Shown here: piece by piece, positions 1 to 64,000 of the stretch
Layout of the letters: each line of letters begins with the position of its first letter
How positions within the stretch are numbered: the stretch's first letter is position 1
Source: Haliotis rufescens
Lineage: Eukaryota
Reading direction: 5' to 3'
Assembly: GCF_023055435.1 (NCBI RefSeq)
Contig: NW_025963802.1
Coordinates: 36,704,001-36,768,000, forward strand
Length of the DNA: 64,000 nt
The notes under the pieces: model-generated
Told to the model about the DNA's origin: nothing
Database searches by the model: none
What the model saw: the letters and a program-made list of their open reading frames with translations, nothing else
Translations under genes and position numbers: made by a program

Positions 1-579
1 CACCTACCGAGCTAGAATATGATCTTCAGCACCATCGTCATCACGTCGTCTCTTTTCTCCGAAAAGGGATTTCCTTGTTCCATGGAAACCAGTCCTCCTG
101 TGATCCAAAGGTAGTGGCGACACCTGATAAAGAAACATATCCCACCAAATGTTTTATTTGGATTAGACTTTTTTTATGAATATAGATATTTCTGGCAAAT
201 ATTATATTTTGTTTCAAGCATTTACAGGATAGTATATTGATATACCTAAGTATTTCTGCAAATAAAAACTGCCCATAGTGTTAAATGAAATGTAACAAAC
301 CTCGCTATCACTGCCAAGAGATTCAAAGCCACTATCTCGAGAGTTGTCTTCATCGAAAACTAGGCTCTGCTTGATAAAGATTTCGGGTGAAGTCGGACAC
401 TCAAGGTTATTTGACAGGTCACTGGAAAACTGAAAAGAACTATTTTTCATATGATTGTTTTCATCCTTTAATTGTTTCTTATTATGATTAAATGAACATA
501 AGAAGTCGGTCTTTTGGTTGTGAAACAAGTCAAAATGTTATTATAAATTAATACTTACCGAGAGCTGCCTTCTTGACAT
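1..579 (-). pseudogene. cdc25: Cdc25 phosphatase copy 1, 5' part only (runs off window start); probable pseudogene
   Basis: Exons 579-559 (MSRRQLS, then GTAAGT donor), 429-301 ([18 protein letters not shown]...[12 protein letters not shown]) and 123-1 ([27 protein letters not shown]...). In-frame TAG at 6-4 where copy 2 has CAG. Confidence 0.8.
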
Positions 580-656
580 TATGACACAAGTATAATATTG
601 GTAAGAAATGTAAGTTGGACAATTGAACAGTTTTAAGGCGAATGACACAATGTCTG

Positions 657-658
<2 letters not shown>

Positions 659-696
<38 letters not shown>

Positions 697-864
697 GCAT
701 TAAGTGTTTAAGAGGTCGCCTTCTGCTTAAGCAATTTCGGCTGACCTGTCCCTCTGTGTGTGAGTAGGGTACACATGTCTATTGTGAGTTTGGTATTCAC
801 CGCTAAAGCATCTCTTGGCTTTAGGAGATCTATGACAGATAGTGGATCTAACTGCAATTTTTGT
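659..864 (-). mobile_element. Short retroposon / 5'-truncated non-LTR 3' end with (CAA)n tail, inserted upstream of the copy 1 ATG
   Basis: 11-bp target-site duplication CAATGTCTGTG at 648-658 and 865-875; (GTT)13 tract at 658-696; the paralogous site in copy 2 (~8485-8495) is empty. Confidence 0.8.
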
Positions 865-894
865 CAATGTCTGTGCATTCTCCTGTCTATATAT

Positions 895-1260
895 ATACCT
901 ATACAAAAACAACACATTAACATAACAAAGAAAGCACTCGTTAATCGGTTCATTATTCATTTAACCGTACTTTATTCATAACGAATAATGAAAACATAGT
1001 TAAACCCTAACGAGGGTGTGCGGGGGATTGTCCCGGGGTAATCCAATGTGCCGATGGTCCATGTATTGATAACACAGAATTCAAACAGGTTTGGTCGTCA
1101 GTTGAATGACAATTGAGGACAATTTGTATTTACTTTGGGAACAAGATATTTAATACGGGCACACTTTTTACGTGAATTCCCCACTGGTTTGGTTAAGGTG
1201 TAAAGTAAGCAGATTTATCAAGGGACTGTCAGGATGATCTGGATTAGCTTGATTAGGATC
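895..1260 (-). promoter_or_regulatory. Conserved upstream module of copy 1 (internally deleted)
   Basis: Aligns by eye to the module that precedes every Cdc25 copy; regulatory function is inferred. Confidence 0.55.
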
Positions 1261-2334: not shown

Positions 2335-2680
2335 TCGCACCTTAACCCCTCCCTTTGGCTTCATGCAGAAAGTGTATCTGTATACAGTAAAATATCGTTC
2401 TTAAGTGACATTAAGCTAACGATCTAAACCCTGCATTATCCCATATTATATCGGTACTTTTGATGGCTAACTTGGATTATTACCAGACCTTAATCCCTCA
2501 CACCTTGTTATATGTAGCTAATATCCACTGGACGTACAAGCGATAGTACTTTCACACAAAGCCCACATTGTTGTCGGGTCGCTTAATGTGTTAATGTTTA
2601 TCTTCGTTTTCATTTGACAGTAGAAAACAATGTACGCTCAATTGGGCAATGAGCTTATCAACGAGTGTTATCTTTGTTGC
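2335..2680 (+). promoter_or_regulatory. Diverged upstream module preceding Cdc25 relic A
   Basis: Retains module blocks such as TAATCCCTCACACCTT, ACAAGCGAT, AGCCCACATT and ATCAACGAGTGTT. Confidence 0.5.
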
Positions 2681-2973
2681 ATACGCGTGTACTTGATTCA
2701 GTAACTGTATACACACTTCAAATACAACAGAAATGGTATCATTCACCTGCTCTCTATTTGGCCCATAGTATTGCAAAACCTATTTGAAGAATCTATTCAA
2801 TAACGTGAAGAAGTCAGCTTTCCCTTCACGAACATCATATCTACAGTAAAGGTTTGTTAATCTGTTGTTATCAATAACTTTGTCTGATCAAGAATAATGT
2901 TCACAGTATTACATGAAAGCATAAAAATTAATCTGATATATAATATAAAGAAATACTTATATTTTCCATTCAG

Positions 2974-3570
2974 GTTTTAAAGTCAGAATTTACAGGAAGT
3001 CTTCATCCTAAAGAGCCTCGACGACGAAGATTTCACAAAACAGTCTTTGAGTCTTTTTGCAGCGACAGCGAGAATTGAAAAGTTTCATATTATGCAGCAT
3101 ACANNNNNNNNNNNNNNNNNNNNNNNNNNNNNNNNNNNNNNNNNNNNNNNNNNNNNNNNNNNNNNNNNNNNNNNNNNNNNNNNNNNNNNNNNNNNNNNNN
3201 NNNNNNNNNNNNNNNNNNNNNNNNNNNNNNNNNNNNNNNNNNNNNNNTCAGACAATGTCGCTAATTGACTCAAAATATATAGAAGTGACATCGGAAATTG
3301 TGAAGAGAGTTTCATAAAACAAATGGTCTTATCGGTGATGGTTATTAGTCACCATCAGAAGGAGAGAAACAGAGCATACCCAGTCGACGTCTCCACATTG
3401 ATGTGTCTCCACTCAAGCTATCTCCAGTCTGATTTGACTGAAATACTCTGGCGATGGTGTTGATACCTGCGTGTTGAGGTTTTAGGGAAAGACAATTTAC
3501 AGGCTGTTCGTTGTTTTGTTACCGTGTTGTGATACATTAGTGTTGTATATCATTGTTCAATGTGAATAAA
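2974..3570 (+). pseudogene. cdc25: Cdc25 relic A: decayed exon 1, end of exon 2 fused to tail of last exon, and 3'UTR; catalytic domain absent
   Basis: 2974-3072 resembles EVFI.KSL.DDED...FES.CSDSE; ~3281-3348 resembles EVTSE...LIGDG; then GEKQSIPSRRLHIDVSPLKLSPV* (TGA 3430-3432); 3'UTR-like sequence with AATAAA at 3565-3570. Confidence 0.75.
3104..3247. other. Assembly gap (144 N)
   Basis: Run of N. Confidence 1.
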
Positions 3571-6528: not shown

Positions 6529-8402
6529 TTACCAAAGAGGCATCTTGAGCGGAGACGTGTCTATTATGAGACGTCGACTGCGCATGCCCTGTTTCTCTCC
6601 TGCTGTCCACGACTTGGACTTCACCCGGAAGTGACGTAGTTGTTTGGAGTAATCCTGGTGCAGCATGGGAACGTAGTTTCTTGGTTGACACTGAGTCTGA
6701 AATAGAGTTGTAAAGACACATTATTACATAACATTTTACAAAAAAAGTAGTACAGTACAAATAACTCTGCTTTATTAAAATGTATATGAAAAACGTATAC
6801 ATGTACACTAAATATAGACATATTTATCTTTCCGGAAAAGGGACTCCCGTTAATTTCAAACGTTTCTCAACCTACCTGATGTTGTTCATGGAAGGCCTTG
6901 TATCCACCATCTAACAGGTATACTTCCGGGTAGCAGAGGAAAGGGTAACGGTCACTGTTCAGCTTCCGGTCAAGGTTTCTAAGGCAGCGCAATCTGTATC
7001 AGAGAACCGTTTTATAACGAGAGGCTAAGATATGCATGCTTGTTTGAGTGTTCATTTAAACTGAGCATCGTTATCGTAATGTTAGAATCGTTCAGTGTCT
7101 CAAGTGAGGAATGTGACAAAATACTTACAGTTTCGGGCCTCTCTCTGAGGAAAATTCACAGTGGAAGACCAGGATGTTTCGTTGAATGGAGTCCCTCCCT
7201 TGTAGGCTGGTCACTAAGTCTGTGATCAGAGTCTCGTTGTGAAGGTTCTCGGCACCCTGAAGTAAATAATTAGTAAAATGTAAATGTTACTAGATGTTAG
7301 GCAAAATACAATCAATATGCTCTTAATGTATTATTCTATGAACAATATTACATGGCCATGGTTGTACTGTTTATGTAAAGACAGTAGCATACCTCAATGT
7401 GACCACCTTCATATTCATATGGGTAACGACAGTCGATGATCCTGTAGCTGGAAATGACGTCATCGTACTGTCCTGCCAGAAGCTGACTGACTGTGTGTGG
7501 AGCCACAGACTTGAGATCCTTGTGTCTTCCTTGTATGGTTGGTAGACTATGATTCTGGAACACAAACACTAACGTTATTGATATAAATTTGAAGTTGTTT
7601 TCCAGTTATCTCGTTATCTTCAAAATCAGCGTGCATTTTTTAACTCTAAAGAATGTATTTGATTGATAAATATGAAATAATTAGTCTCCAACTGACCTGT
7701 GAGCCATCACCGATAAGATCAGTGCCCTGTTCCATTTTGTCGACGGCTGACTTTATAACATCTGACGTGACTCCTGTTTGGGCTTTGGGGACAACATTGG
7801 TTGTTTTAAGTTTCTTCATCTGCCGAGCTAGAATATGATCTTCAGCACCATCGTCATCACGTCGTCTCTTCTGTCCGAAAAGAGATTTCCTCGTTCCATG
7901 GAAACCAGTTCTCCTATGATCCAAAGGTAGTGGCGACACCTAATGAAGAAACATATCATCAAATGTTTTATTTTGATTAGAATAATGTTTAAGAATATAC
8001 ATATGTCTGTCAAATATTCATTTTGCTTGTTTCAAGCGTTTACAGTATGGTATTTATATACTAAGTATTTCTGCAAATAAGAACTGCCCATAGTGTTAAA
8101 TGAAATATAACAAACCTCGATGTCACTGCCAAGAGATTCAAAGCCACTATCTAGAGAGTTGTCATCATCGAAAACAAGGCTCTTCTGGGTGAAAACTTCC
8201 GGTGAAGTCGGACACTCAAGGTTATTTGACAGGTCACTGGAAAACTGAAAAGATGAAACGAAATAGTTTTCATATGTTTGTCTTCATCCTTAGTTTTTTT
8301 CGAATTATGATTAAATGAACATGAGACGCCGGCCTTGTAGTTGTCAAACAAGTATAAATGTCGCAATAAATAAATAGTTACCATGATCTGCTTTCGTGAC
8401 AT
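6529..8402 (-). CDS. cdc25: Cdc25 M-phase inducer phosphatase copy 2, 7 coding exons, 322 aa, intact
   Basis: Exons 8402-8382, 8244-8116, 7939-7697, 7554-7393, 7256-7129, 6993-6876, 6696-6529; all introns GT-AG and phase-consistent. Motifs [49 protein letters not shown]. Confidence 0.92.
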
Positions 8403-8509: not shown

Positions 8510-8958
8510 TATACCTGTACTAAAACAACATATTAACATAACAATGAAAACACTCGTTAATCGTTTTATTATCCAGTTAACCTTCTCTATTCATAATGGC
8601 TATTGAAAACATAGTTAAACGCTTACCCAGTAAGAAAGTGCGCTTGGTGTGAATGTACGATTGCTTGCGTCCCCCGTAGATATGGAGTCGCCCATACGAG
8701 GGTGTGAGGGAGATTATCCCGAGGTAATCACAAGGTAGGACATCAAATGTGCCGGTAATCCATGTATTGATAACATAGAATTCAAGTAGTTTTGGTCGTC
8801 AGTTGAATGACAATTAAGGACAATTTGTATTTACTTTGGGAACAAGATATTTAATACAGGCACACTTTCTGCGTGGATTCTCCATGGGCTGGGTTAAGGT
8901 GTAAAGTAAGCAAATTTATCAAGCGGTTGTTAGGATGATCTGGATTAGCTCGATTAGA
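8510..8958 (-). promoter_or_regulatory. Conserved upstream module of copy 2
   Basis: Full-length match to the module upstream of the other copies. Confidence 0.6.
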
Positions 8959-10024: not shown

Positions 10025-10375
10025 CTTAGCACCTTAACCCATCCCTCGGGGTTTATACAGAAAGTGTGTCTGAAATACACTTAAAATTCTTAAGTTCTTA
10101 AGTTCTTAAGCTTACGATCTAAACCCTGCATAAGCCCATATTATATCGGTACATTTGATGGCTAATTTGGATGATTACCAGAGCTTAATCCCTCACACCT
10201 TGGTATATGTAGCTAATATCCACTGGACGCACAAGCGATCGTACTTTCACGCCAAGCCCACATTGTTGTCGGGTCGCTTAATGTGTTAATGTTTATCTTG
10301 GTTTTCATTTCATAGTACAAAACAGTATACGCTCAAATGGGCAATGAGCTTATCAACGAGTGTTATCTTTGTTGC
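10025..10375 (+). promoter_or_regulatory. Diverged upstream module preceding Cdc25 relic B
   Basis: Paralogue of 2335-2680. Confidence 0.5.
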
Positions 10376-10722
10376 ATCCACGTGTAGTTGTTGATTAAGT
10401 AACGGTATCCATACTTCAATTACAATAGAAATGATATCATTCACATGCTATCTATTTTATTCCTAAAGGTTACAGAAAAAATTTCAACAATGTATTCAAT
10501 AATGTGAAGAAGTCAGCTTTCAGTGAACATAAGCGACAAAACCCTTTCCTTTCACTGACATCATCGACAGAATAGGTTTGTTAATCAATTGTTATCAACA
10601 ACATATATTTTTGTCTGATAAAGAATAATGTTCACCGTATGAATCTGATGATATAAAAAAACACTTATTTTTTTCATTGTTGTTTTTTCATGGGCTATTC
10701 GAGAAAAGCACTTACAGTGAAA

Positions 10723-11265
10723 GTCGGGATATACAGGAAGTCTTCAACCCTTAGAACCTCGACGACGAAGATTTACAAGTCTAGCGAGAATTGAAAAAGT
10801 CTCATATTATACAGTAGACAAACAGTACAGTTTCAAATGAATGAATGAATGAATGAATGAATGAATGAATGAATGAATGAATGAATGAATGAATGAATGA
10901 ATGAATGAATGGAGATCATCAATCCTTTGGTAACGCCAAATAACACTATAGATCAGACAATGTCGCTAATAAATCCAAATAGAAGTGACATCGAAAATGA
11001 TGACAAGAGTTGGATTTACAAAATTGTCATCGGTGATAGTTAACAGTCGCGATCAGCAGTAGAGAAACAGACCATACCTAGTCGACGCCTCCACATTGAT
11101 GTGTCTCAACTCAAACTATCTCTTGTGTGATTTGACTGAAATGCTATGGCGATATTGATACCTGCGTGTTGAGATATTAGCATATGACAATTTACAGGCT
11201 GTTCGTTGTTTTGTTACCATGTTGTGATACATTAGTGTTGTATATTATTGTTCGATGTGAATAAA
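10723..11265 (+). pseudogene. cdc25: Cdc25 relic B, paralogue of relic A; catalytic domain absent
   Basis: Exon 1 remnant 10723-10788; exon 2 end ~10981-11046 (..ATCGGTGATAGTTAACAG) joined to the last-exon tail (EKQTIPSRRLHIDVSQLKLSLV*, TGA 11128-11130); AATAAA at 11260-11265. Confidence 0.75.
10836..10911 (+). repeat. (AATG)19 microsatellite
   Basis: Perfect tetranucleotide repeat. Confidence 0.97.
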
Positions 11266-14022: not shown

Positions 14023-15988
14023 TTACCAAAGAGACATCTTGAGCGGAGACGTGTCAATTATGAGACGTCGACTGCGTATGCTCTGTTTCTCTCCTGCTGT
14101 CCACGACTTGGATTTCACCCGGAAGTGACGTAGTTGTCTGGAGTAATCCTGGTGCAACATGGGAAGGTAGTTTCTTGGTTGACACTGGGACTGAAATAGA
14201 GTTGTATAGACACATTATTACATAAAAGTTTACAAAAAAAGTAGTACAGTAAAAACAACTCTGCTTTATTAAAATGTATATGAAAAAAAGTATACATATA
14301 CACTAAATATAGACATATTTATCTTTCCCGAAAAGGACCCGTGAAGATTCCGGTGTAGAATAGGTCTTCAGCAACCCATGCTTGTCGTAAAAGGTAACTA
14401 ACGGGATCGGGTGGTCAGTCTCGCTGACTTGGTGGATGCATGTCGTCGATCCCAATTACGTGGATCGATGCTCATGATATTAATCACTGGATTGTCTGGT
14501 CCAGACTCGATTATTTACAGACGTTATATAGCTGGAGTGCGGCGTTAAACAACAAACCAACCAACCAACCAACTTTCCCGAAAAGAGACTCCGGTCAACT
14601 TCAAATGTTTCTCAATTGCAACCTACCTGATGTTGTTCATGGAAGGCCTTGTATCCACCATCTAACAGGTATACTTCCGGGTAGAAGAGGAAAGGGTAAC
14701 GGTCACTGTTCATCTTCCGGTCAAGGTTTCTAAGATGGCGCAATCTGTATCAGAAGATACATCACTGAATGAAACGTTGCATTAGAAAATGATAATTACT
14801 TTCGATGTCATTAGTATTTTACATCGTGCAATAAACGTATAAAACCGGTCCACATATATTTGAAGTTGTTTATATCAACCACTTTTATGAAATACTTACA
14901 GTTTCGGGCCTCTCTCTGATGAAAATTCACAGTGGAAGACCAGGATGTTCCGTTGAATGGAGTCCCTCGCCTGTAGATTGGTCACTAAATCTGTGATCAG
15001 AGCCTCGTTGTGAAGGTTCTGGGCACCCTGAAGTTGAAAAATGGTAGTATTTAGATTACAGACCTTTAGAATGTTGATCTCTGCCATTGTAGATTTGTTT
15101 ATAGTGTGTGAGATCACCACACCAATAATAAAAAAAAGTGTTGAATTTATTTGTAATATGTGAGATATTATGTAGGTTTACCTCAATATGTCCGCCTTCA
15201 TATTCATAAGGGTAACGACAGTCGATGATTTGGTAACCGGAAATGACGTCATCATATTTTCCAGCAAGAAGTTGACTGACTGTGTGTGAAGACACAGATT
15301 TGAGATCCTTGTGTCTGCCTCGTATGGTTGGGAGACTATGAATCTAAAACATAAGGAAAACTTTATAAGAACTTTAATAATATTGCTATTTATATGTCTA
15401 TGTGATAGAAATGTTAACAAAATGATTAATTCCCTTATTATTGCAATTAATTAGGCAATTCAGACCTATTTAATAATCGACATAACAATGGAATAATAAA
15501 CCTTCCACTAACCTGTGAACCATCACCGATCAGGTCAACCTCATTTTGCATTTTGTCCACAGCTGTTTTCATAACTTCTGACGTTAATTCTACTTGGGTT
15601 TCATGGACAACGTAGGCGGTTTTGTGATTCTTCGTTTGCTGAGCTTGAACGTGTTCGTCATTTTCATCATCATAATCACGTGGTCTCTTTCCCGTGAAAA
15701 GCGACTTCCTTGTGCCATGAAAACTTGTTCTCATGTGAACCAAAGATTGGGGAGACACCTGAAGAAAAAATCATATATTGCCTTTAAGTTTCTAAATAAC
15801 TGTCTTTCCTTTCTTTGTGTATATCTTTCTATCTGTCTTATAAATAAAAAAGCGTGATATATTATTCAACACACCTCGTCGTCACTGCAGAGAGACTCAA
15901 AGCCGCTATCCTGTGGGTCTTCATCATCGAAAACTAGGCTTTTTGGTTTGAAAACATCCAGTAAACTCTGACGTTGCTTTCTAGACAT
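14023..15988 (-). CDS. cdc25: Cdc25 copy 3, 6 coding exons, 311 aa, intact
   Basis: Exons 15988-15875 ([38 protein letters not shown]), 15758-15513, 15343-15182, 15027-14900, 14744-14627, 14190-14023; all GT-AG; HCEFSSERG intact. Confidence 0.92.
14336..14572 (+). mobile_element. SINE-like retroposon with (CCAA)n tail in the last intron of copy 3
   Basis: 13-bp TSD CTTTCCCGAAAAG at 14323-14335 and 14573-14585; empty site in copy 2 (~6828-6840); same family at 57292 and 18736. Confidence 0.88.
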
Positions 15989-18470: not shown

Positions 18471-18579
18471 TATACCACAGAAGCAAGACACAGCGTCATT
18501 CTCCTGGCAACTGACTAACTTGCAAATACAAGATTACAGATATACTTTCTTAAAATTCCGAAGAATTTGTAAAAATACA

Positions 18580-35161: not shown

Positions 35162-35194
<33 letters not shown>

Positions 35195-45762: not shown

Positions 45763-45880
45763 ACATACAACAGATGCAAGACACAGCGTCATTCCCCTGG
45801 CAACTGCATAACTTGTAAATATCTGACCATAGATATAAATTTCTTAACATTCAGAATAGTTTGGCGAAATCTGTCCCACA

Positions 45881-47754: not shown

Positions 47755-49755
47755 TCTGGAAGATGAATTGCTGAAATGTGAAATGTCACCTGTTGTCCGA
47801 GTGTTGGATTTCAGAGATTTGTTGTTTATTGCCACTGTTATTGTTGATTATGTTGGTGCCTGAATGTTAAGGTAATCACGGAATACTTTATACATACGTT
47901 GACCTGTTTTGTCAACCACACTGTGATACTGTCCTGTTATTGACTGTTTCTTTGTACGATATGAATAAATACTGATCTTCAGCTCGTTTAGTGTCCTCTC
48001 TTCGAAACACACACTTTTCTTACACTTTCGCATCAAACCATCAATCTTCTCCACTGACGTAACACGGCTTTCCATAGATTGACACATACAGGGGTCCATC
48101 CCATCTCCCCCTGTACTGCATCATTAGGAGTATATTTTACGACTCCAAGAAAATGTCTACACGCTCTGTTTTGAATCTTGTAATTGTAGAACATTCTCTA
48201 GTTCCACAAACTGATGCGCCATACGTAATCACAGGTAGCACAATTGCATCATACACTTTGGAATACGCATCGTATGGGAGACCACCCAGGACTTTACTGT
48301 TAGCAATGATAAGACCCAGGGCTCTGCTCGCTGACTGAGGAACTGCTTTTGCCGTCGTGGTAAAATCCCGGAATTCATCAATTAAAAGTCAGAGATAGTT
48401 GTACTCTAAAGACACTTGCGACCCAGGCGTCATCGTGACTTTCACCAAAGTAAGTGATTAAAATGTACCTCACCAACGCCTATTGGGATTTTACCCCACA
48501 TTAAGCTGACATGTGGACATACAAAATTGATTTTGATTTTTATCTGAGTGATCCGTGGTTTATGTTTTAGATAAGCAAAGAATAAAGTAAGATTACGAGA
48601 CCATGAAAAAAATAACAGGAGCATAATTAGAATTATTAATTGTTACATTATAAGAATGGAATAGTATAGATTACAATGTGTATTATTGGCAGTATATATA
48701 TTTTCAGTTTAGTAAACTGAAGTAAAAATAAAATGACAATGTGCTATAATTTGTCTTGATCTAATTGATGTTATGGTATACCATTTAGTTTTCTTTATTT
48801 CTCTTCAAAATATCAGAGCGGGACAAACAGACAGACTGATGGGTGGGGGATGGGGGAGGATACAAAATGCTTCTGAGACAGTCATGTCGTTCTAGTATCA
48901 TTCAGTTACAATTCTTATAAAGAATATACACATTGTAGAAAGTAATATTCATGTGTTAAAGATATATAAATCATTTATTCGGATACTTACTATAAATCTT
49001 ATTGGGTTTTAAAACGTACAAATCCATATAAACTGGCAGTGTGGTCATATTCGGAGGTATTTGCTACACCATTGAACAATGAATTAATTATCATATTTGC
49101 CCAGGCTCCCGTTTGTTCCAAAGTACTGGGATATCCATAGACTGGTATTGCATTCATATCTCACTTGGGAAAAACGCCAGTCATTTTAGTGTCAAGACTC
49201 CACGGTAATGCTGTGCACGTGGTTAAAACATTAAACGTCTTTTTCAAGGTTACAGGCTGACGTGAAATATATCCCACATTATGTTTCAGAACGCATGACT
49301 GTTAATGTCGTGACTAACTGTCAACCAAAGCACTAGATACAATAGAATATGTAAAGCTGTAAACTGAACATTGATTGACTTCATTGAATAGCCAAGTAAC
49401 GTCGTTTATATCAAACATGAATATTCTTAAATTTATCGGAAAACGGAATTTAGGCCACTGACCCAGTGCAGTGTTTGTAACGCTGACACCGGTGGGGCAG
49501 GATACGCCCACCTTTTCGCGAACACCTGGTATCATCACTATGATAGTTATTCATAAACACATGCTTGTGATATGGTCGGAATCGTACATTGGTGTCAGCA
49601 GAATCTTCTTATGACGTTTGTGTGTTTCAGTCAGCAAGTGAAGTGTTAATGCATGTTCAAACAATGGAACAGGAGACAGGAAACCAATAAGAAATACACT
49701 ATATGTCACGATGTGTTACGTTTTTTGTGTAAACGTGATACTCTACAAGCATTAG

Positions 49756-50184
49756 TCTAATCCAGCTCATCCCGATCACCCTAACTTCCCTTTAATAAAC
49801 ATGCTTTCTTACACCTTAATCCAGCGGGTCGGGAATACATGCAGAAAGAGGGCCCGCATTAAATGTCTTGTTCACAAAATAAATATAAATCTTCCTTAAT
49901 TGCCATTCAACTGACGACGAGAACGACCTGAATTCGGTGTTATCCAAACAGGGGCTGCAGGTACATTTGAAGTTCTACCTGGATGATTACCTCGGGATAA
50001 TCCCTTCTCACCTTTGTATAGGTAGCTACGTATCTACGGGGGACACAAGCGATCGCGCATTCACACCAAGCCCACATTCTTAACTGATCTCCTTTAATGA
50101 GTGAATGTTTATACTGCTTCCATTAACCAATATAGACAATGTACGATCAATTGGGTAACGAATCAATCAACGAGTCTTTCTTTG
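49756..50184 (+). promoter_or_regulatory. Orphan upstream module
   Basis: Near-identical to 31284-31712. Confidence 0.55.
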
Positions 50185-53265: not shown

Positions 53266-54024
53266 ACGTCAATTTGTGTAGGAATATTGATGTAAAACGT
53301 ATTCGCAACCAAAAGGTAAGTGATCTATAACAAATATAAAGTGTTGGACAGTGTTCTGATTTGCTGGGTGGTATGACATAGCCATGTTTGGATTATATCT
53401 AGCGTACATTTTTCGAACAGCCAGCAATGTTCTCAATGCCATAACAGTGTTATATCAAGTCGTTTACTCGGCATGCTGAAGACCTAGGTTCGATTCCCTA
53501 TTTTGGTACAATGTGTGAAGCCCATTCTTGATGTCCCATTCGTGGTATAACCACAGCATTATTATAAGACTGAGACTCGAGTGATATTCTCTGTACCTTT
53601 CTTGTTCTACTGTAAATGACTTTGAGCCGAATACCAAAATTAAATAAAATGACAGAAAATATTTCTATCATTATATGATATCTCTAAAATAAATCTGGAT
53701 CACTATCAAATAGTGCTTATACAATGAGTCTAACGTCCAACAAGAGACTTAACAGCAATAATTGTCGGAATAACGTGAAGCTTTTGAACGTTTTCCATCT
53801 ATTATATTCGATGAAAACAAGAAGATGCAAATACGTGGACATATACACAGTAATCACCGCTTAAAGTCAAATCATTTTTTTGTTTCTGCTGAAGCTGCAC
53901 ACGCACGCGCGCGCACACACACACACACAGAAGAAATAAAAGAAAAACAATAGCTTTCTCCGTGTGCTTCCTTTTAAAGATTAATAGACACCTAACTATC
54001 ATGAAAATTCTCTACAAACATGAA

Positions 54025-54458
54025 TCTATTCCAGCTAATCCAGATCATTCTAACTGGCCCTTGATAAACCTGCTTACTTCACACCTTAACTCAGCCAGTA
54101 GGGAATCCACGCTGAATATGCGCCTTAATTAAACATCTCGTTTGCCATGTAAATAGAAAATCGTCCTTAATTGTCATTCAGCGGACGACCACAACGAACT
54201 GAACCCTGCGTTGTCAATACATGGGTTAACGGTACATTTGATGTCCTACCTGGTGATTACCCCAGGATAATCCCCCTCACACCCTCGTATGAGTAGCTCC
54301 TTATACCTACAGGGGACACAAGCGATCCCGCATTTTCACACCAAGCCCACATTCTTAACCGTTCTCCTCTAATGTGTTAATGTTTATATAAGTTTTCAAC
54401 TAATCGATCAACGAGTGTTGTCGTTGTTATGTAAATATGTTGTTTTAGTGCAGGTATA
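54025..54458 (+). promoter_or_regulatory. Conserved upstream module of copy 8
   Basis: Near-identical to the copy 7 module. Confidence 0.6.
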
Positions 54459-54575
54459 CATACAACAGATGCAAGACACAGCGTCATTCCCCTGGCAACT
54501 GCATAACTTGTAAATATCTGACCATAGATATAAATTTCTTAACATTCAGAATAGTTTGACGAAATCTGTCCCACA

Positions 54576-56448
54576 ATGGCAAGAAGAGAATGTATACCAG
54601 AAGTCTTTATCCCAAAGAGCCTTGATTTCGATGACGAAGACTCACGTGATAGTGGCTTTGAGTCACTTTGCAGTGACAATGAGGTTTGTGGAACTATGTA
54701 TAATCGAACTGACAACAGCTACATTGGGCAGATAGTGATATATACGCAGCAATGGATATAGAGAGCTATGGATAATGAATAGTTAAATGGTTGCATAAGA
54801 TGATTTTAAAAAAGGAAGTGTGATTTTACATGTAATTGTTTAGCCAACATTGAAATTTAATGTATGCATGTTTCTTCATCAGGTGTCCCCACAACCTTTG
54901 GATGACAGGAAAGCTGATTTCCATGGAACAAGGAAGTCACTGTTCGGAGGAAAGAGACAACGTGACAATGGTGATGACGGAGTTAATTATGTTCAAGCAA
55001 GGCAGATCAAGAAACAAAAAACAGCCAGCTGTGGCCATAACCTCCATGACGAAGTAACATCAGAGGTCATGAAGACAGCAGTTGATAAAATGCAAAATGA
55101 AGTTGATCTCATCGGTGATGGTTCACAGGTTAGTTGAGGATTCGTCCTTCCATTCTAATATTGATTATATAGACCTTCTGACTTGCTTAATCTATTTGAA
55201 TGAGAAGGAAATCCACATTTTCAAGTTGCCATTATGTTTTCAGGTTCATAGTCTCCCAACGATACAAGGCAGACACAAGGATCTCAAATCTGTGACTCCA
55301 CACACAGTCAGTCAGCTTCTAGCAGGAGAGTACGATGACGTCATTTCCACCTACAGGATCATTGACTGTCGTTACCCATATGAGTATGAAGGTGGTCACA
55401 TTGAGGTACGCAGCTGTCTTTAAGCTTGTACAATGGAATGTAATCTATGTTTTTGATTGCTCATGTAATATCTTTGCATAATACACACACAAAATTACTG
55501 ACATCAAAATTTTGCGAAGAGTTTGCTGAGCTTATATTCTTACATTATTTACTTCAGGGTGCCGAGAACCTTCACACCCACGCTCTGATCACAGACTTAG
55601 TGACCAGTCTACAGGGGAGGGACTCCACTCAACGGAACATCCTGGTCTTCCATTGTGAATTTTCATCAGAGAGAGGCCCGAAACTGTAAGTATTCTTTCT
55701 TACGTAAAACACAGTTGCAGTTGACGTAAAGGACTCAGACGTTAAACGTTTAGATCATTGTTCACATGAAAATTGATGATGCAGTTTCTATTGTTAATAC
55801 ATTGTACGTTGTTTCTCGTGTATAACACTTGAAACAGTCGACGAAAAAGATCGTCCGGTCATAAGTTTACTGCACTACCCAAAATAATTGATTGTTTGGG
55901 GGTTGGTTTTTTAATTTGTTTTATCTTATGTAACAATGATTTCAATTATGTATCTTCTGATACAGATTGAGACTTCTTAGAAACCTTGACCGGAAACTGA
56001 ACAGTGACCGTTACCCTTTCCTCTTCTACCCGGAAGTATACCTGTTAGATGGCGGATACAAGGCCTTCTATGAACAACATCAGGTAGGTTGGCGAATATT
56101 CGAAACTGACGGGTCCAAATGTAAATATGTCCTTATTTAAATGCATACCTTTTGATATTCATTTTAATATACATTCTAAATTTAAAGTTATCTGTCCTAC
56201 CCTTTTGGGGTAGAATGTTGTGTTATCAGTGAATTAATGTGTCACACGGATGGTCATAAATACTTTCTTATAACTTTCAGTCTCAGTGCAATCCAAGAAG
56301 TTACGTCCCTATGCTGCACCAGGATTACTCCAAACGACTACGTCACTTCCGAGTAAAGTCCAAGTCATGGACAGCAGGAGAAAAACAGAGCATGCGCAGT
56401 CGACGTCTCATAATAGATTCGTCTCCGCTTAAGATGTCTCCATGGTAA
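54576..56448 (+). CDS. cdc25: Cdc25 copy 8, 6 coding exons, 309 aa, intact
   Basis: Exons 54576-54683, 54883-55128, 55244-55405, 55558-55685, 55966-56083, 56281-56448; all GT-AG; AATAAA at 56658-56663. Confidence 0.94.
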
Positions 56449-57995: not shown

Positions 57996-59300
57996 ACACT
58001 TGCGACCCAGTCGTCATCGTGACTTTCACCAAAGTAAGTGATTAAAATGTACCTCACCAACGCCTATTGGGATTTTACCCCACAGTAAGCTGACATGTGG
58101 ACATACAAAATTGATTTTGATTTTTATCTGAGTGATCCGTGGTTTATGTTTTAGATAAGCAAAGAATAAAGTAAGATTATCAGACCATGAAGAAAAATAA
58201 CAGGAGCATAATTAGAATTATTAATTGTTACATTATAAGAATGGAATAGTATAGATTACAATGTGTATTATTGGCTTTATATATATTTTCAGTTTAGCAA
58301 ACTGAAGTAAAAATAAAATAACAATGTGTCATAATTTGTCTTGATCTAAATGATGTTATGGTATACCATTTAGTTTTCTTTATTTCTCTTCAAAATGTCA
58401 GAGCGGGACAAACAGACAGACTGATGGGTGGGGGATGGGGGAGGATACAAAATGCATCTGAGACAGTCATGTGGTTCTAGTATCACTCAGTTACAATGCT
58501 TATAAAGAACATACACATTGTAGAAAGTAATATTCATGTGTTAAAGATATATAAATCATTTATTCGGATACTTACTATAAATCTTATTGGGTTTTAAAAA
58601 GTACAAATCCATATAAACTGGCAGTGTAGTCATATTCGGATGTATTGAATAATGACTTAATTATCATATTTGCCCAGGCTCCCGTTTGTTCCAAAGTACT
58701 GTGATATCCATAGACTGGTATTGCATTCATATCTCACTTGGGAAAAACGCTCGTCATTTGAGTGTCAAGACTCCACGGTAATGCTGTGCGCGTGGTTAAA
58801 ACATTAAACATCTTTTTCAAGGTTACAGGCTGACGTGAAATACATACGCATGACTGTTAATGCCGTGAATAACTGTCAACTAAAGTACCAGATACAATAG
58901 AATCTGTAAAGCTGTAAACTGAACATTGATTGACTTCATTGAATAGCCAATTAATGTCGTTTATATCAAACGTGAATATTCTTAAATTTATCGGAAAACG
59001 GAATTTAGGCCACTGAACCAGTGAAGTGTTTGTGACGGTGACATCGGTGGGGCAGGATACGCCCACCTTTTCGCGAACACCTGGTATCATCACCATGATA
59101 CTTATTCATAAACACATGCTTGTCGGAATCGTATATTTGGCCAGCAGAATTTGCTTATGACGTTTGTGGGTTTCAGTCAGTAAGTGAAGTGTTAATGCAT
59201 GTACAAACAATGGAACAGGAGACCGGACACCAAAAAGAAATGCACAATATTTCACGATGTGTTACGTATTTTGTGTTAATGTGATACTCTACAAGCATTA

Positions 59301-59733
59301 GTCTAATCCCGATCATCCCGATCACCCTAACTTCCCTTTAATAAATATGCTTTCTTTACACCTTAATCCAGCTGGAAGGGAATACATGCAGAAAGTGAGC
59401 CCGCATTCAATATCTTGTTCACAAATTAAATATAAATCTTCCTTAATTGCCATTCAACTGACGACGAGAACGACCTGAATTCGGTGCTATCCAAACATGG
59501 GCTGCAGGTACATTTGAAGTTCTACCTGGATGATTACCCCGGCATAATCCCTTCTCACCTTCGTATAGGTAGCTACGTATCTACGGGGGACACAAGCGAT
59601 CGCACATTCACACCAAGCCCACATACTTAACTGATCTCCTTTAATGTGTGAATGTTTATACTGCTTCCATTAACCAATATAGACAATGTACGATCAATTG
59701 GGTAACGAATCAATCAACGAGTGTTTTCTTTGC
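59301..59733 (+). promoter_or_regulatory. Orphan upstream module
   Basis: Near-identical to 40676-41108. Confidence 0.55.
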
Positions 59734-61094
59734 TCAGCGATCTTACCCACACAGCCACCGGGGCGTCCACAAAATGAAAGTCCGACAACTGTTAGTCAAG
59801 ATCACTTGATCAAGGTACTTTTTTTTACCCCTCTGACAAGTCTAAATCTAGACTTCCAGTTGTCAGACTTTCATTTCTTGAAAGCCTTGGTGGCTGGGTT
59901 AGATCGCTGACTTTGTGTGCTGGCGATTAAGTGCCTCACTCTGGGAGTGTGGGTTTGAATCCCGGATGGGACTTAACCCAAAAAGAACTAGCTAGAATCT
60001 ATACCAGAAAATGTTATCACGAATATAAGAAATTGCAAATGTATATTACTAATTGGTTCAAATCTGAAAAAGTAACTTCAGTAACATGTGCATCCCAGCC
60101 TTTGTTGGGAGACTTAAAAATCCTGTTATCTCAGGTGTTCTATTGAATTATTCTCTGTATGTTTGGGGCAAAAGATTCATTGCTGAAACATAATAAACAA
60201 TAGCATCAATCGCTGGACAGGATTGCTATATAAAACGAGTTCATAGTATAGGAACCTGTTATGCTACAATAATATATGCAATGTCAGTCCTTTGAAGAAA
60301 TTGAATGATATCGAAAACATGTTCAAAATCCACTAATCTGGACAATATTGATCCTGGCACCAAATTTGGGTACTTACATTACATGAAATAGATACCTTTT
60401 CAATTTGAAATTTCTTCTTAAACTTACGTTTTAAGACTTTATGAACCTTTGTGATTCCCATACGTTTACACGGAATGGATTGGAAAACAAGTCGTGCGAC
60501 TTATATGAATACTTTTCCAGTAATACGTACAATTGAAAATGAAATACAGTAAAGGTAGCAATAACTGAGAGATTATGCCATTGGATATGATGAAGGTGTG
60601 TCGGGGGGTGCTATAGGCTATATAAACTGGTTAATGATCAATTTGAAAATAGTTTTGTTTGTTTAATATCATCACGAACAGATGCCAAAATTGTTTGCTT
60701 TAACGTTTCCGATTTCTAGGGAAGTGCCATAAGATGCCAAACAGATGTACTATCCCATAGTATAGAAGTATGAGTTTGATCTTTATGGTTCTATAAATTG
60801 GACATATTAAGAAACAATGAGCAGTGTCCTCGCATACCGAACCACGGGAACAAGAAGGGTCTTCGCAGATGTGTCTACAGTACTTGCAGATCTAGACTTT
60901 CAAGTCAGTACATCTTAGTCGCAGTCAAAGTAAAATTGTTGTGCACAATCATAAAATTTTATTAATAACTCGTTTAAAATATCATATGAACCTGCGTTAG
61001 TCAAATCTGGCGATAAAATGTTCCGTAAGTTCGTTCTAGTGTGAATAAAATTATTTTCATAGTTTTTAGTTCTGCATTCAATAACTTGTAAAAA

Positions 61095-62340
61095 GTATTT
61101 TGATGATTTGGATAAAGAAATCTGGTATCAAGATAATATTGATGAAATTCGATATATGCAAATTGGTAAAACTCCCGGATATAGTGGAATTCCAATTGAA
61201 ATTTTCAAAAATGCACCAGAATTAAGTATTAATTGGCTAAAATCTTTATCTACAGGTATGTATCCACCTGAATGGTCCAACTGAGTTATTATTTCCCTTC
61301 TATAAGAAGAGTAGATCTGACTGTCCACCAAACTATTGACTATTGCTTGAAGTTTCGGGTAAAATTTTCTCTCAAGTTTTTATTGATAGATGAAATCATT
61401 GGGCCAAGCGGGAACATTTTTTCATTCACAAGCAGGCTGGGTAAAGATATGGTTTTCAGACGCACGATAATATTTTTGTTCTCAGCACCATCATTAATAA
61501 GTACCTATAAATATAATGGGCAGTTGTATTGCGCCTTTATTGATTTAAAGTCAGCCTTTAACTCTGTAGACAGGTATAGGTGATTTATTACAAACTTGTG
61601 CTAGGAAATGTCAAAGGCAAGACCTTTAGATTGTTAAGAAGCGTGTATGAAAAAGTTCAAGCTTGTATTTCAGTGAAGAATGGATATACATTTCTTTATT
61701 GTTTATTGGCGTACGTCAAGGGTGCCAGTTATCACCTTTCCTTTTCTCTTTGTTTGTTAATGATATTGTTGAAAGTCCATATGCAGGATTAATTTAGAAT
61801 TTATTGAGTTATTTATGTGACATTGTATTGTTTGATCTCTCAGTTTTAAGTTTAGAAAAAAGGCGAGACAAAGTAGTTTTGTACTGCAATAAATTGAAAT
61901 TAACAATAAATCTTGATACGAGGAAAGTAATTGTATTCAGAATGGCTGACAGATTAAAATGCTACTAATCATTCTTTCTGAATGGAAATCCTCTTGAAAT
62001 AGTTTCATTCCAAACTTTCTGGGGGTCCATTTTTCGTGCTCAGGATCATGGATGAAAAGTAGTAGTAATCCTTTAATCATCATAATGTTTTTGATAATTT
62101 GCCAACGAAGGTATTGTTACATATATTTCATGTCAAAAGTCTTCCAATTTTGTTGCTCGGGAGTGCTGTTTGGGCTTTTCATCCATCAGCAAATGCCATT
62201 AATCTACCAAACAAGTTGTTGAGTTATTAAATATTGAACTCATTTGTTATCGCGAGTGGATAGTCATTTGGGAAACATTGCAAGGAATCGTTCAAGACTC
62301 CAGGTTATATTAGTCACAAGCGAGATGTAACAAGGAAGAT
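61095..62340 (+). mobile_element. Decayed CR1/L2-group LINE RT (more divergent unit copy)
   Basis: YCAFIDLKSAFNSVDR and GNVKGKTFRLLRSVYEKVQACI. Confidence 0.82.
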
Positions 62341-63004
62341 TATGTCTATTGAAGCAATTTACTTTTAATTATTAACACGTTAATTTGTTAATGAATATTG
62401 ATATATATATTTTGTGAATTAAAAACGGTTTCGCAACCAAACGGTAAATGATCTAGACAGTTTTTTTATTTGCTGGAAATAGCCATGAATGGATTATATT
62501 TGGTGAACATTTTTGGAACAGCCAGCGATGTTCTTAATGTCATTAGATCGTAATATCAAGTCGTTTGATCACTATGCTGAAGATCTAAATTCCATTCCCT
62601 ATATTGGTACAATATGTGACACCCATTCGTGGTGGCATATTCGTGGTATTACCACAGCGTTGTTATAAGACTGAGGCTAAAGCACAAAATCTACTGTAAA
62701 TGACTGTGAGCCGAATACCAGATTCAAATAAAATAAAGTGACAGAAAACATTTCAATAATCATAAATTATCTTTAATAAAATCTGAAACACTATCAAATC
62801 GTGCTTGTATAATTATTCTAACGTCCAACAAGAAAACATACAGACAGTAATAACCTCATTTAGTCAAATCATTTTATTGTTTCTGCTAAAGTTGCCATAG
62901 AACCACACACACACACTAAACAGAAAAACAATAACTTTTTCCATGTGCCTCCCTTACAAGATTAATAGACACGTAACTGACAAGACATTCTCTACAAACA
63001 TGAA

Positions 63005-63450
63005 TCTAGTCCACCTAATCCAGATCATTCTAACTGGCCCTTGTTAAACCTGCTTACTTTACATCTTAACACAGCCACATTGCACCTTGATGAAACATCT
63101 CGTTTGCCATGTAAATACAAATCGTCCTAAATTGTCATTCAGCGCACGACCACAACAAACTGAATCCTGCTTTATCAAAACATGTGTTAACGGTACATTT
63201 GATGTCCTACCTGGTGATTACCTTGGGATAATCCCCCTCACACCTTCGTTTAGGTAGTTCCATACCTATGGGGGAGGCAAGCGATCCCGCATTTTCACAC
63301 CAAGCCAACATTCTTAACCGATCTCTTCTAATGTGTTAATGTTTACATAAGTTTTCATTAAATAGAATAAAGAAAGTGCGATCGATTGGTCGCCCAATCG
63401 ATCAACGAGTGCTGTCTTTGTTATGTAAATATGTTGTTTTAGTACAGGTT
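63005..63450 (+). promoter_or_regulatory. Conserved upstream module of copy 9
   Basis: Proximal module, more divergent than those of copies 5-8. Confidence 0.6.
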
Positions 63451-63568
63451 TATATACAACAGATGCAAGACACAGCATCATTCACCTGCCAACTGCATAA
63501 CGTGCACATACATGACCATAAATATACTTTCTTAACATTCAGAATTGTTTGAAGAAATCTGTCCCACA

Positions 63569-64000
63569 ATGCCGAGAAGAGAATGTCAGAGTTTACCAGA
63601 AGTCTTTATCCCAAAGAGCCTTGTTTTCGAAGACGAAGACTCACGTGATAGTGGCTTTGAATCACTTTGCAGTGACAGTGAGGTTTGTCGAATTGTGTAT
63701 AATCGAACAGAGAACAGCTACTTCTTAAATATATAAAGCAGACAGAAATATATATGCAGTAATGGATATGGATAATGGATAGTTAAAGGGTTGGATGAGT
63801 CGGTTTCAAAAAAGAAATGTGATGCTTTTACATGTAATTGTTAAGCCAACATTGAAATGTACTGTATGCATGTTTCTTCATCAGGTGTCCCCACAACCTT
63901 TGGATCACAGGAAAGCGGGTTTCCATGGAACAAGGAAGTCACTGTTCGGAGGAAAGAGACAGCGTGACAATGGTGATGACGGAGATTATGTTCAAGCGAG
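63569..64000 (+). CDS. cdc25: Cdc25 copy 9, 5' part (runs off window end)
   Basis: Exon 63569-63682 ([38 protein letters not shown]) and exon 63885->64000 ([27 protein letters not shown]...), open so far. Confidence 0.85.

What the first reader, a model, noticed from the sequence alone, without database searches (positions are those of the whole stretch)
1..64000. Large, actively turning-over tandem array of Cdc25 mitotic-inducer phosphatase genes
Seen: nine gene copies in 64 kb (six complete and intact), two relics and five gene-less upstream modules; genes are cut by both window edges, so the array is probably larger. Established: Cdc25 removes inhibitory Cdk1 phosphates, is dose-sensitive, and is normally present as a few dispersed genes (human A/B/C, Drosophila string/twine, four in C. 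elegans). Inference: birth-and-death amplification of a core cell-cycle trigger suggests selection for a high-dose, stage-restricted pulse of Cdc25 (cleavage divisions, oocyte maturation or spermatogenesis), or some form of germline conflict.
Basis: partly seen in the sequence, partly recalled or inferred. Interest (0 to 1): 0.88.

Follow-up and report, generated by a model that had tools for sequence, protein, structure and literature searches.

The report
Abalone tandem array of Cdc25 genes
This stretch of the red abalone genome really does hold a turning-over tandem array of short but intact Cdc25 cell-cycle phosphatase genes. It is part of a much larger abalone-wide amplification whose purpose is still untested.

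Summary
The window is Haliotis rufescens, C24:36,704,001-36,768,000. It holds nine Cdc25-like gene units:
- six intact genes of 6-7 exons (308-322 aa);
- one copy that has lost the catalytic-cysteine exon;
- two copies cut by the window edges.

It also holds two dead relics and five gene-less copies of a ~440-bp upstream module.

Outside the window the array grows to 14 units over ~93 kb, 11 of them intact. All 11 are already RefSeq 'M-phase inducer phosphatase-like' models.

Evidence that the copies are real and functional:
- They are diverged, with dS from 0.006 to 0.55.
- Several have one-to-one orthologues in H. cracherodii.
- dN/dS is 0.2-0.4, significantly below 1 for every pair tested except the youngest.
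- One RNA-like run gives spliced contigs.

Turnover is real. There are pseudogenes, a red-abalone-only duplicate pair, and a separate 17-member clade in H. asinina.

Short, multi-copy Cdc25 genes are the norm in molluscs, and two conserved single-copy genes lie 105-120 kb away.

The whole-genome check also found two four-gene clusters. Unexpectedly, it found a ~520-kb array of about 200 near-identical 2.63-kb units on contig C57; the two units read in full each carry a complete 332-aa Cdc25-like gene.

Stage, tissue and function are untested. The scan's first readers had noted other Cdc25 clusters of this genome on other DNA.

The parts
1..384 (-). Copy c1 (beta type), cut by the left window edge. 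Exon 1 is at 384-301 and exon 2 runs from 123 to the edge. Outside the window it has exon 4 and part of exon 3 but no exons 5-6, so it is probably a truncated pseudogene.
894..1256 (-). Upstream module of c1.
2418..3426 (+). Relic 1. It consists of a partial module (2418-2676), an exon-1-like piece (2991-3072), the assembly gap (3104-3247), and then an exon-2 end fused to the second half of exon 6, with stop codons (about 3290-3426).
6529..8402 (-). Copy c2, intact, 322 aa, 7 coding exons: 8402-8382 (a 21-nt first coding exon), 8244-8116, 7939-7697, 7554-7393, 7256-7129, 6993-6876, 6696-6529. It equals RefSeq XP_046358403.2 (P0166).
8510..8958 (-). Upstream module of c2.
10114..11107 (+). Relic 2, the paralogue of relic 1. 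It has a partial module (10114-10371), an exon-1-like piece (10720-10778) and an exon-6-like piece (11054-11107).
14023..15988 (-). Copy c3 (gamma type), intact, 311 aa, 6 exons: 15988-15875, 15758-15513, 15343-15182, 15027-14900, 14744-14627, 14190-14023. The RefSeq model XP_046358402.2 is partial.
16101..16557 (-). Upstream module of c3.
18035..20460 (+). Copy c4, a pseudogene, with its module at 18035-18470. Exons 1, 2, 3, 5 and 6 are present (18580-18693, 19145-19387, 19503-19664, 19972-20089, 20293-20460). Exon 4, which carries the catalytic Cys, is deleted, and the donors after exons 3 and 5 are mutated (AT and GA).
22337..22691 (+). Orphan upstream module 1 (no gene follows).
26916..29283 (+). 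Copy c5 (delta type), intact, 308 aa, with its module at 26916-27296. Exons: 27414-27521, 27725-27967, 28083-28244, 28397-28524, 28801-28918, 29116-29283.
31270..31712 (+). Orphan upstream module 2.
35318..37706 (+). Copy c6 (the reference model), intact, 308 aa, with its module at 35318-35752 and a TATA-like box about 105 nt before the ATG. Exons: 35870-35977, 36181-36423, 36539-36700, 36841-36968, 37218-37335, 37539-37706.
40663..41107 (+). Orphan upstream module 3. Similarity to gene-linked modules ends just before the TATA-like box, and a high-copy repeat follows.
45329..47754 (+). Copy c7, intact, 309 aa, with its module at 45329-45763. Exons: 45881-45988, 46188-46433, 46549-46710, 46863-46990, 47272-47389, 47587-47754.
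49742..50184 (+). Orphan upstream module 4.
54024..56448 (+). Copy c8, intact, 309 aa, with its module at 54024-54458. Exons: 54576-54683, 54883-55128, 55244-55405, 55558-55685, 55966-56083, 56281-56448. It is 99.3% identical to the c7 unit over 4.6 kb.
59288..59732 (+). Orphan upstream module 5.
63004..64000 (+). Copy c9, cut by the right window edge, with its module at 63004-63452. Exon 1 is at 63569-63682 and exon 2 starts at 63885. The gene is complete and intact (310 aa) in the flanking DNA.

Best explanation
The window is the core of a tandem family of short Cdc25 (M-phase inducer) phosphatase genes, about 93 kb and 14 units long, on a 43.8-Mb chromosome-sized contig of the red abalone. 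On the sequences sampled, this family is found only in Haliotis.

Shown:
- Each intact unit pairs a ~440-bp conserved upstream module and a TATA-like box with a 6-7-exon gene.
- The gene encodes about 120 N-terminal residues: a DSGFES motif of the beta-TrCP degron type, a KSLF motif and basic stretches.
- These are followed by a complete Cdc25 catalytic domain with the HCEFSSER active-site loop.
- The residues that align with R488, R492 and Y497 of human CDC25B are kept.
- The family evolves by birth and death. There is tandem and inverted duplication of units 8-18 kb long, pseudogenisation, and loss of gene bodies that leaves orphan modules.
- The survivors stay under purifying selection.
- Four subfamilies coexist: alpha (A); beta (B, C, c1, c2); gamma (D, c3); delta (c4 to c10).

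Inferred:
- The proteins dephosphorylate Cdk1/Cdk2 like other Cdc25s.
- The older subfamilies, whose N-termini evolve 3-4 times faster than the catalytic part, provide differently regulated inducers.
- The young near-identical delta copies add dose.
- The shared module, with its invariant TAATCC pairs and a TCACACC (T-box-like) block, co-regulates them in a particular developmental or germline setting.
For: Identity and species:
- The contig length of 43,813,872 equals that recorded for Haliotis rufescens RefSeq proteins.
- RefSeq proteins map at 100% onto c2, c3 and c5-c9, and onto A to D.

Family membership:
- P0166 (copy c2) matches CDC25C/B/A at E 1e-53 over the whole catalytic domain.
- Pfam Rhodanese scores above its cut-off.
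- The CDC25B alignment of exon 5 is.

Intactness: open frames and canonical splice sites in 11 copies.

Selection: whole-CDS pairwise dN/dS is 0.21-0.43. In the ten pairs tested, Fisher p runs from 9e-13 to 0.05. Only c7-c8 looks neutral, with 7 non-synonymous and 1 synonymous change.

Turnover and age:
- A Haliotis-only clade has 98% support.
- Copy A is one-to-one in four species.
- The beta and gamma copies have orthologous partners in H. cracherodii.
- c7 and c8 pair within H. rufescens.
- H. asinina has its own 17-member clade.

Expression: run X1 covers only the exon bins. It has a GT..AG joint that removes intron 2, and joints across exons 4-5-6 of a beta-type paralogue.

Regulatory module: it sits ahead of all nine genes, with invariant blocks between subfamilies.
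Against: - No enzymatic, genetic or stage-resolved expression data exist.
- X1 is only guessed to be RNA. Its species and tissue are coded, and it gave no cover of exon 1.
- RefSeq models of the delta copies start at an internal Met (211 aa). Some run on into the next unit, so the true mRNA structures are uncertain.
- dN/dS of 0.2-0.4 is relaxed for a core cell-cycle enzyme.
- Gene conversion between copies could distort both the tree and dS.
- Counts of TAATCC sites in homologous modules are not independent observations.
Confidence: 0.75

Rival explanations
1. Pure dosage amplification for the germline or early embryo. On this view the copies are interchangeable and exist to deliver a very large maternal or cleavage-stage, or spermatogenic, pulse of Cdc25.
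For: - The five delta copies are near-identical (dS 0.006-0.12) and share one promoter module.
- About 200 further near-identical Cdc25-like units lie on C57. This looks like a histone-style multicopy battery.
- In a clam, six CDC25 probes are higher in spawned oocytes (PMC4254928).
- All copies keep a DSG degron, as expected for a protein that must be removed abruptly.
Against: - Four diverged subfamilies with fast-evolving N-termini have been retained as orthologues in two species. Interchangeable dose copies would not be expected to behave so.
- There are no stage or tissue data.
- Invariant homeodomain-type and T-box-like blocks in the module fit zygotic, patterned transcription as well as they fit maternal loading.
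Confidence: 0.3
2. Largely non-functional amplification. The array is a by-product of unequal crossing-over in a repeat-rich region, and most copies are on their way to becoming pseudogenes.
For: - Of the 14 units in the full array, three are dead (c1, c4, c10). There are also two dead relics and five orphan modules.
- The youngest pair, c7-c8, shows no constraint, with 7 N and 1 S change.
- Two C57 units differ by 4 N and 2 S changes, and a third has lost its catalytic exon.
- Reverse-transcriptase-like ORFs (by eye) and a high-copy repeat fill the spacers.
Against: - Eleven copies keep open frames and every splice site despite dS up to 0.5.
- dN/dS is significantly below 1.
- Orthologues are kept in H. 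cracherodii.
- Spliced transcripts exist.
Confidence: 0.1
3. Genetic conflict. The amplified Cdc25 copies act selfishly in meiosis or gametogenesis (a drive and suppressor arms race), which would explain rapid, lineage-specific copy-number change.
For: - There are independent amplifications in H. asinina and in the H. rufescens / H. cracherodii lineage.
- H. rufescens carries a ~200-unit array.
- The N-termini evolve fast.
Against: - No pairwise dN/dS exceeds 1, apart from one non-significant young pair.
- There is no evidence on sex linkage, transmission or germline restriction.
- A small-RNA run (X9) laid nothing on the stretch, and without proof that the organism is in that run this is no test.
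Confidence: 0.05
4. Assembly artefact. On this view the copies are haplotigs, or a falsely expanded repeat.
For: One assembly gap lies in the window. c7 and c8 are 99.3% identical.
Against: - The copies differ by 1-30% in sequence and have different flanks, orientations and defects.
- An independent assembly of H. cracherodii has matching orthologues within a run of 14 RefSeq accession numbers.
- Contigs from two DNA runs of other samples cover exons, introns and spacers at 92-100% identity.
Confidence: 0.02

Closest known systems
Human CDC25A/B/C (M-phase inducer phosphatases 1-3)
   Same: The catalytic domain aligns end to end (E 1e-53 to 1e-45), with the [10 protein letters not shown] loop, DCRYPYEY(E)GGHI and YPE(V/M)Y. 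The residues aligned with R488, R492 and Y497 of CDC25B are kept. The numbering is from memory; the alignments are. The DSGFxS motif resembles the CDC25A beta-TrCP degron (from memory).
   Different: The N-terminus is about 120 aa instead of 300-400 aa and gives no Pfam PF06617 match. The human genes are three and dispersed; here 14 units lie in tandem.
Drosophila string/twine and C. elegans cdc-25.1 to cdc-25.4
   Same: These are lineage-specific Cdc25 paralogues with germline and embryonic specialisation (general knowledge; twine and cdc-25.2 are cited in PMC4254928). RefSeq even names an H. rubra relative of the C57 type 'cdc25-like protein phosphatase twine'.
   Different: They number two to four, are dispersed, and are old paralogues. 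They are not a tandem array that is turning over, and nothing comparable to about 200 units is known in them.
Molluscan short Cdc25-like genes (for example seven CDC25 genes reported in Crassostrea gigas)
   Same: They share the short, rhodanese-only architecture of about 290-350 aa. Many paralogues per species occur in Mytilus, Mya, Argopecten, Pecten, Dreissena, Patella and Lottia (PMC4254928).
   Different: The window genes belong to a clade found only in Haliotis (98% support). In the held paper library I found no description of their tandem organisation, turnover or copy number.
Oikopleura dioica CDK1 paralogue expansion
   Same: It is a precedent for multiplying a core, normally low-copy cell-cycle regulator in a marine animal with fast-developing planktonic embryos (bioRxiv 10.1101/817783, seen; abstract only).
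   Different: It concerns a different gene (the kinase, not its activating phosphatase), five paralogues, and no tandem array of near-identical units.

Membership tests
Cdc25 dual-specificity phosphatases | A rhodanese-fold catalytic domain homologous to CDC25A/B/C over its whole length. | tested here: met
   P0166 (window copy c2) matches PDB CDC25C, B and A at E 7e-53 to 2e-45 over residues 111-303. Pfam Rhodanese scores 44.8 bits against a cut-off of 22.2. Exon 3 alone gives E 9e-17.
Cdc25 dual-specificity phosphatases | The active-site loop H-C-X5-R. | tested here: met
   HCEFSSER is present in c2, c3 and c5-c8 (and in c9, A, B, C and D outside the window). It is absent from c4 because that exon is deleted.
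Cdc25 dual-specificity phosphatases | Substrate-docking residues remote from the active site (R488, R492, Y497 in CDC25B numbering, recalled from memory). | tested here: met
   In the alignment of exon 5 to CDC25B, RFIRERDRAVND--YP aligns with [18 protein letters not shown] and Y are kept, with a two-residue insertion.
Cdc25 dual-specificity phosphatases | The long N-terminal regulatory region, Pfam M-inducer_phosp (PF06617). | tested here: not met
   P0166, P0159 and the conserved single-copy P0190 give no PF06617 match, whereas a 548-aa chiton Cdc25 does. A whole-genome scan with PF06617 found nothing, but its controls were also silent. This region is typical of vertebrate-like Cdc25s rather than defining. 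It is missing from most mollusc relatives found.
Cdc25 dual-specificity phosphatases | Dephosphorylation of Cdk1 pThr14/pTyr15 and induction of mitosis. | not testable with these tools
   This needs an enzyme assay, complementation of S. pombe cdc25-22, or oocyte injection.
Birth-and-death tandem gene family | Diverged functional copies, pseudogenes and lineage-specific duplicates side by side, rather than uniformly homogenised copies. | tested here: met
   dS ranges from 0.006 to 0.55. c1, c4, c10 and two relics are dead. Orthologues in H. cracherodii stand beside species-only duplicates and a separate H. asinina clade.

The most novel reading that the evidence does not exclude
Abalone may run a multicopy Cdc25 'battery'. 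More than 20 diverged genes lie on one chromosome, and a ~520-kb array of about 200 near-identical 2.63-kb units lies on another; the two units read in full each carry a complete 332-aa Cdc25-like gene.

If most of these are transcribed, for example in oogenesis or cleavage, this would be a histone- or rDNA-style amplification of a dose-sensitive mitotic trigger. I know of no such case in any animal.

It would also give a natural system for asking how Cdk1 activation thresholds tolerate, or exploit, a hundred-fold change in gene dose.
Probability: 0.25. Interest if true: 0.85.

Novelty: new member of a known kind. Interest (0 to 1): 0.6.

Why it matters
Cdc25 sets the timing of mitotic and meiotic entry and is treated as a low-copy, dose-sensitive gene. 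An animal that keeps a dozen intact, selected tandem copies, and possibly hundreds more on another chromosome, challenges that picture.

It also gives a testable system for three things:
- how regulatory N-termini and promoters diversify after duplication;
- how copy number of a cell-cycle trigger varies between closely related, commercially and conservationally important species;
- whether broadcast-spawning molluscs use gene amplification to drive oocyte maturation or rapid cleavage.

The genes are already auto-annotated in RefSeq, so the new content is their organisation, evolution and scale, not the protein family.

Tried and rejected
- PF06617 scan of the own genome: no match, but the control genomes were silent too, so it is uninformative.
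- Tandem Repeats Finder on L015: nothing, because the 2.63-kb period exceeds its 500-base limit.
- Small-RNA run X9: no reads laid. This is no test unless the organism is shown to be in that run.
I did not try to obtain those letters another way.
The H. rubra context of the C57-type genes could not be read.
- Seven paper searches found no description of a Cdc25 expansion in abalone. Only a passing count for the oyster turned up.
- 'Retrocopy in a satellite' was my first reading of the C57 hits. I rejected it once the unit was read: it has four introns and a complete frame.
- 'Miniaturisation caused by the amplification' is rejected. The conserved single-copy abalone genes and most mollusc relatives are equally short.
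- Joined spliced models were built only inside scripts, for dN/dS and trees. They were never sent to a search tool.

Full report
**What the window is.** The window is AT-rich animal DNA (GC about 36%) and lies at G000:C24:36,704,001-36,768,000 of a 1.33-Gb assembly. Contig C24 is 43,813,872 bases long. That is exactly the contig length recorded for a set of Haliotis rufescens RefSeq proteins, and those proteins map at 100% onto the window's exons. The genome is therefore the red abalone.

**Checking the observation.** Six-frame motif scans find the Cdc25 hallmarks on both strands: [29 protein letters not shown] and [11 protein letters not shown]. I read one copy (c6) base by base. This gave a six-exon model, all GT..AG: 35870-35977, 36181-36423, 36539-36700, 36841-36968, 37218-37335 and 37539-37706, in total 927 nt and 308 aa.

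Mapping the six exons back onto the window gives nine units:
- c1 (minus strand), cut by the left edge;
- c2 and c3 (minus strand), intact;
- c4 (plus strand), which lacks exon 4 (the exon with the catalytic cysteine) and has mutated donors after exons 3 and 5;
- c5 to c8 (plus strand), intact;
- c9 (plus strand), cut by the right edge.

c2 begins with a separate 21-nt coding exon at 8402-8382, as RefSeq XP_046358403.2 confirms.

There are two relics. One is at 2991-3426: an exon-1-like piece, the gap, then the end of exon 2 fused to the second half of exon 6, with stop codons. Its paralogue is at 10720-11107.

A ~440-bp upstream module precedes every gene. It also occurs five times without a gene, at 22337-22691, 31270-31712, 40663-41107, 49742-50184 and 59288-59732.

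**The assembly gap.** The N run at 3104-3247 lies inside relic 1, which is already dead, so no frame depends on it. The sequenced flanks align in the same order and strand to the paralogous unit. Position 3038 aligns to 10778 and 3248 to 10953. The interval is 210 bases (including the N run) in one unit and 175 in the other. This fits a small true gap and shows no misjoin.

**Extent of the array.** With 50 kb of flanking DNA added, the array runs from about C24:36,680,200 to 36,773,400, roughly 93 kb, and has 14 units:
- A(+), B(+), C(-), D(-);
- c1(-), which is truncated, with no exons 5-6;
- c2(-), c3(-), c4(+, dead), c5 to c9(+);
- c10(+), a relic without exons 2-3.

Eleven units have open frames and canonical splice sites, and all eleven correspond to RefSeq 'M-phase inducer phosphatase-like' models. 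Self-comparison shows units of about 7.8 kb on the minus side and 8.5-9.5 kb on the plus side. It also shows an 18.4-kb two-gene super-unit duplicated at 93.8% identity, and the c7 and c8 units at 99.3% over 4.6 kb.

**Are they Cdc25?** The protein of window copy c2 (P0166) aligns to human CDC25C, B and A over the whole catalytic domain at E 7e-53 to 2e-45. Pfam gives Rhodanese above its cut-off but no PF06617. The H-C-X5-R loop is intact. In the alignment of exon 5 to CDC25B, the residues opposite R488, R492 and Y497 are kept; that numbering is from memory. The N-terminal ~120 residues carry DSGFES (the DSGxxS beta-TrCP degron type), a KSLF motif and basic stretches.

**Selection.** Nei-Gojobori estimates on exons 2-6 give whole-CDS dN/dS of 0.21-0.43 for all pairs except c7-c8. 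In the ten pairs tested, Fisher p runs from 9e-13 to 0.05. The catalytic exons give 0.18-0.59 for all pairs except B-C (0.08) and c7-c8 (1.73). The N-terminal exon has 3-4 times higher dN between subfamilies. Only the youngest pair, c7-c8, looks neutral, with 7 non-synonymous and 1 synonymous change.

dS values define four subfamilies: alpha (A); beta (B, C, c2 and the dead c1); gamma (D, c3); delta (c4 to c10). dS between subfamilies is 0.33-0.55.

**Expression.** Of the coded runs, X4 and X8 cover exons, introns and spacers, so they are DNA. X1 is only guessed to be RNA and its organism and tissue are coded. It covers only the exon-bearing bins. It has one joint that removes intron 2 exactly (GT..AG). 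It also has joints linking exons 4-5-6, whose inserted letters match the beta-type start of exon 5. Spliced transcripts of the family therefore exist. Which copies are expressed, and where, remains unknown. X1 gave no cover of exon 1 at 92% likeness.

**Evolutionary setting.** A search with copy A (P0159) found 2,963 relatives at E 1e-10 or better. Short, rhodanese-only Cdc25-like proteins occur as many paralogues per species across molluscs. A clam oocyte study notes seven CDC25 genes in the oyster genome and six CDC25 probes raised in spawned oocytes (PMC4254928).

Trees (quick IQ-TREE searches with SH-aLRT support) show the following:
- All C24 cluster genes fall in a Haliotis-only clade (98% support).
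- Copy A is one-to-one in four species.
- The beta and gamma copies have partners in H. cracherodii. The delta copies are shared with H. cracherodii only partly.
- c7 and c8 pair within H. rufescens.
- H. asinina has a separate clade of 17 near-identical proteins, sister to two from H. rubra.
- Accession numbers run consecutively in H. cracherodii and H. asinina.

This is birth-and-death evolution with independent lineage-specific bursts. Gene conversion cannot be excluded for the youngest copies.

Two conserved single-copy Cdc25 genes lie 105-120 kb to the right of the window: the 344-aa P0190 type and the 312-aa P0021 type. They group with Patella and Lottia, and with Gigantopelta, respectively. 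Both are short too. Among the Haliotis genes found there is no longer parental gene, and the amplification did not create the short form.

**Whole-genome count.** Exon searches of the assembly add two four-gene clusters on the same contig, at 2.5 and 5.2 Mb. RefSeq proteins map to them.

Unexpectedly, they also add a head-to-tail array on contig C57 from about 18.493 to 19.013 Mb:
- A DNA query gave 230 first-look candidates. All 40 that were scored were 99% identical over the full length and fell on a 2.63-kb ladder.
- I could read four units.
- Two of them carry a complete five-exon, 332-aa Cdc25-like gene. It has [27 protein letters not shown] and canonical splice sites. Its introns sit at partly different places from those of the window genes.
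- A third unit has lost its catalytic exon; the fourth runs off the end of the locus.
- The two intact units differ at 0.6% of bases, with 4 non-synonymous and 2 synonymous changes.
- The protein sits on a long branch outside the C24 clade.
- It is 88% identical over 294 residues to an H. rubra RefSeq protein named 'cdc25-like protein phosphatase twine'. That protein is one of three with consecutive accession numbers on one scaffold.

**Regulatory module.** An alignment of ten modules shows blocks that are invariant or nearly so between subfamilies:
- a tandem pair of TAATCC sites at the 5' end;
- CCTTAATTG;
- GGATAATCC;
- TTCACACCAAG, which contains a T-box-like TCACACC;
- AACGAGTG;
- a GGTATATA box about 105 nt before the ATG.

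The orphan modules lose similarity just before that box. They keep the upstream part but lack the core promoter and the gene. TAATCC is about nine times denser in the modules than outside them, but the modules are copies of one another, so these counts are not independent. X1 shows no transcription from the orphan module at 40663-41107.

**Reading.** The best-supported explanation is a real family of working short Cdc25 phosphatases, maintained by selection and evolving by birth and death. Older subfamilies appear to have diversified in their regulatory N-termini, and young delta copies add dose. They need stage-resolved expression data.

The genes are already auto-annotated. I found no paper that describes them. 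The protein is a new member of a known family. What is unusual is the organisation and the scale, above all the C57 array.

**Method note.** Joined spliced models were used only inside scripts. All database searches used exon references or RefSeq protein ids.

Noticed in passing
G000:C57:~18,492,800-19,013,000; sample L015:1-10000 (unit U2 exons, minus strand: 7822-7667, 7491-7192, 7034-6823, 6617-6500, 6350-6138): A ~520-kb head-to-tail array of about 200 units of 2.63 kb, 99% identical to each other. Of the four units read, two carry a complete five-exon, 332-aa Cdc25-like gene, one has lost the catalytic exon, and one runs off the locus end. Some units elsewhere in the array carry a TAG in that exon. 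The protein is 88% identical to an H. rubra 'cdc25-like protein phosphatase twine'. This may be the more remarkable amplification.
   Followed up: partly
window 29275-29283, 37698-37706, 47746-47754 (stop codons of c5, c6, c7) and exon 2 of the next copy: The stop codon overlaps a good splice donor (TG|GTAATC). RefSeq models of c5, c6 and c7, and H. cracherodii models, splice from there into exon 2 of the next unit out of frame. This adds a 56-57-aa tail. It suggests run-on transcripts across units, or an artefact of gene prediction.
   Followed up: partly
L012:2171-2296 (G000:C24:2,522,171-2,522,296): One copy in the 2.5-Mb cluster reads VFH*EFSSER, with TGA exactly at the catalytic cysteine. 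An earlier scan note had flagged this. It could be a pseudogene, a decoy or selenocysteine; I did not look further.
   Followed up: partly
L006:4431-7027 (+) and L007:9110-6420 (-), i.e. C24:36.872 and 36.886-36.889 Mb: Two conserved single-copy Cdc25 genes lie 105-120 kb to the right of the array. One is the 344-aa P0190 type, one-to-one in four Haliotis species and related to Patella and Lottia genes. The other is the 312-aa P0021 type, related to a Gigantopelta gene. They are the likely ancestral neighbours of the amplified family.
   Followed up: partly
window 40424-40622 and 41021-41200: A very high-copy repeat sits directly around orphan module 3. Its word depth in the two DNA runs reaches 30,000-40,000 in one stretch and 3,000-6,500 in the other. 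It is also present in the RNA-like run. It is probably a transposable element.
   Followed up: no
window 33931-34248, 43991-44347, 52686-53042, 61272-61583: ORFs in the spacers between units carry motifs that, by eye, recall retrotransposon reverse transcriptases (LLYGSEVW, FIDLKSAFNSV). Pfam gave no match at E 0.01 or better for the two I tested.
   Followed up: partly
window 35318-35752 and its 13 paralogous modules (alignment A1): Blocks that are invariant or nearly so between subfamilies include a tandem TAATCC pair, a TAATTG site, and TTCACACCAAG, which contains a T-box-like core. This hints at control by homeodomain (K50 class) and T-box factors.
   Followed up: partly
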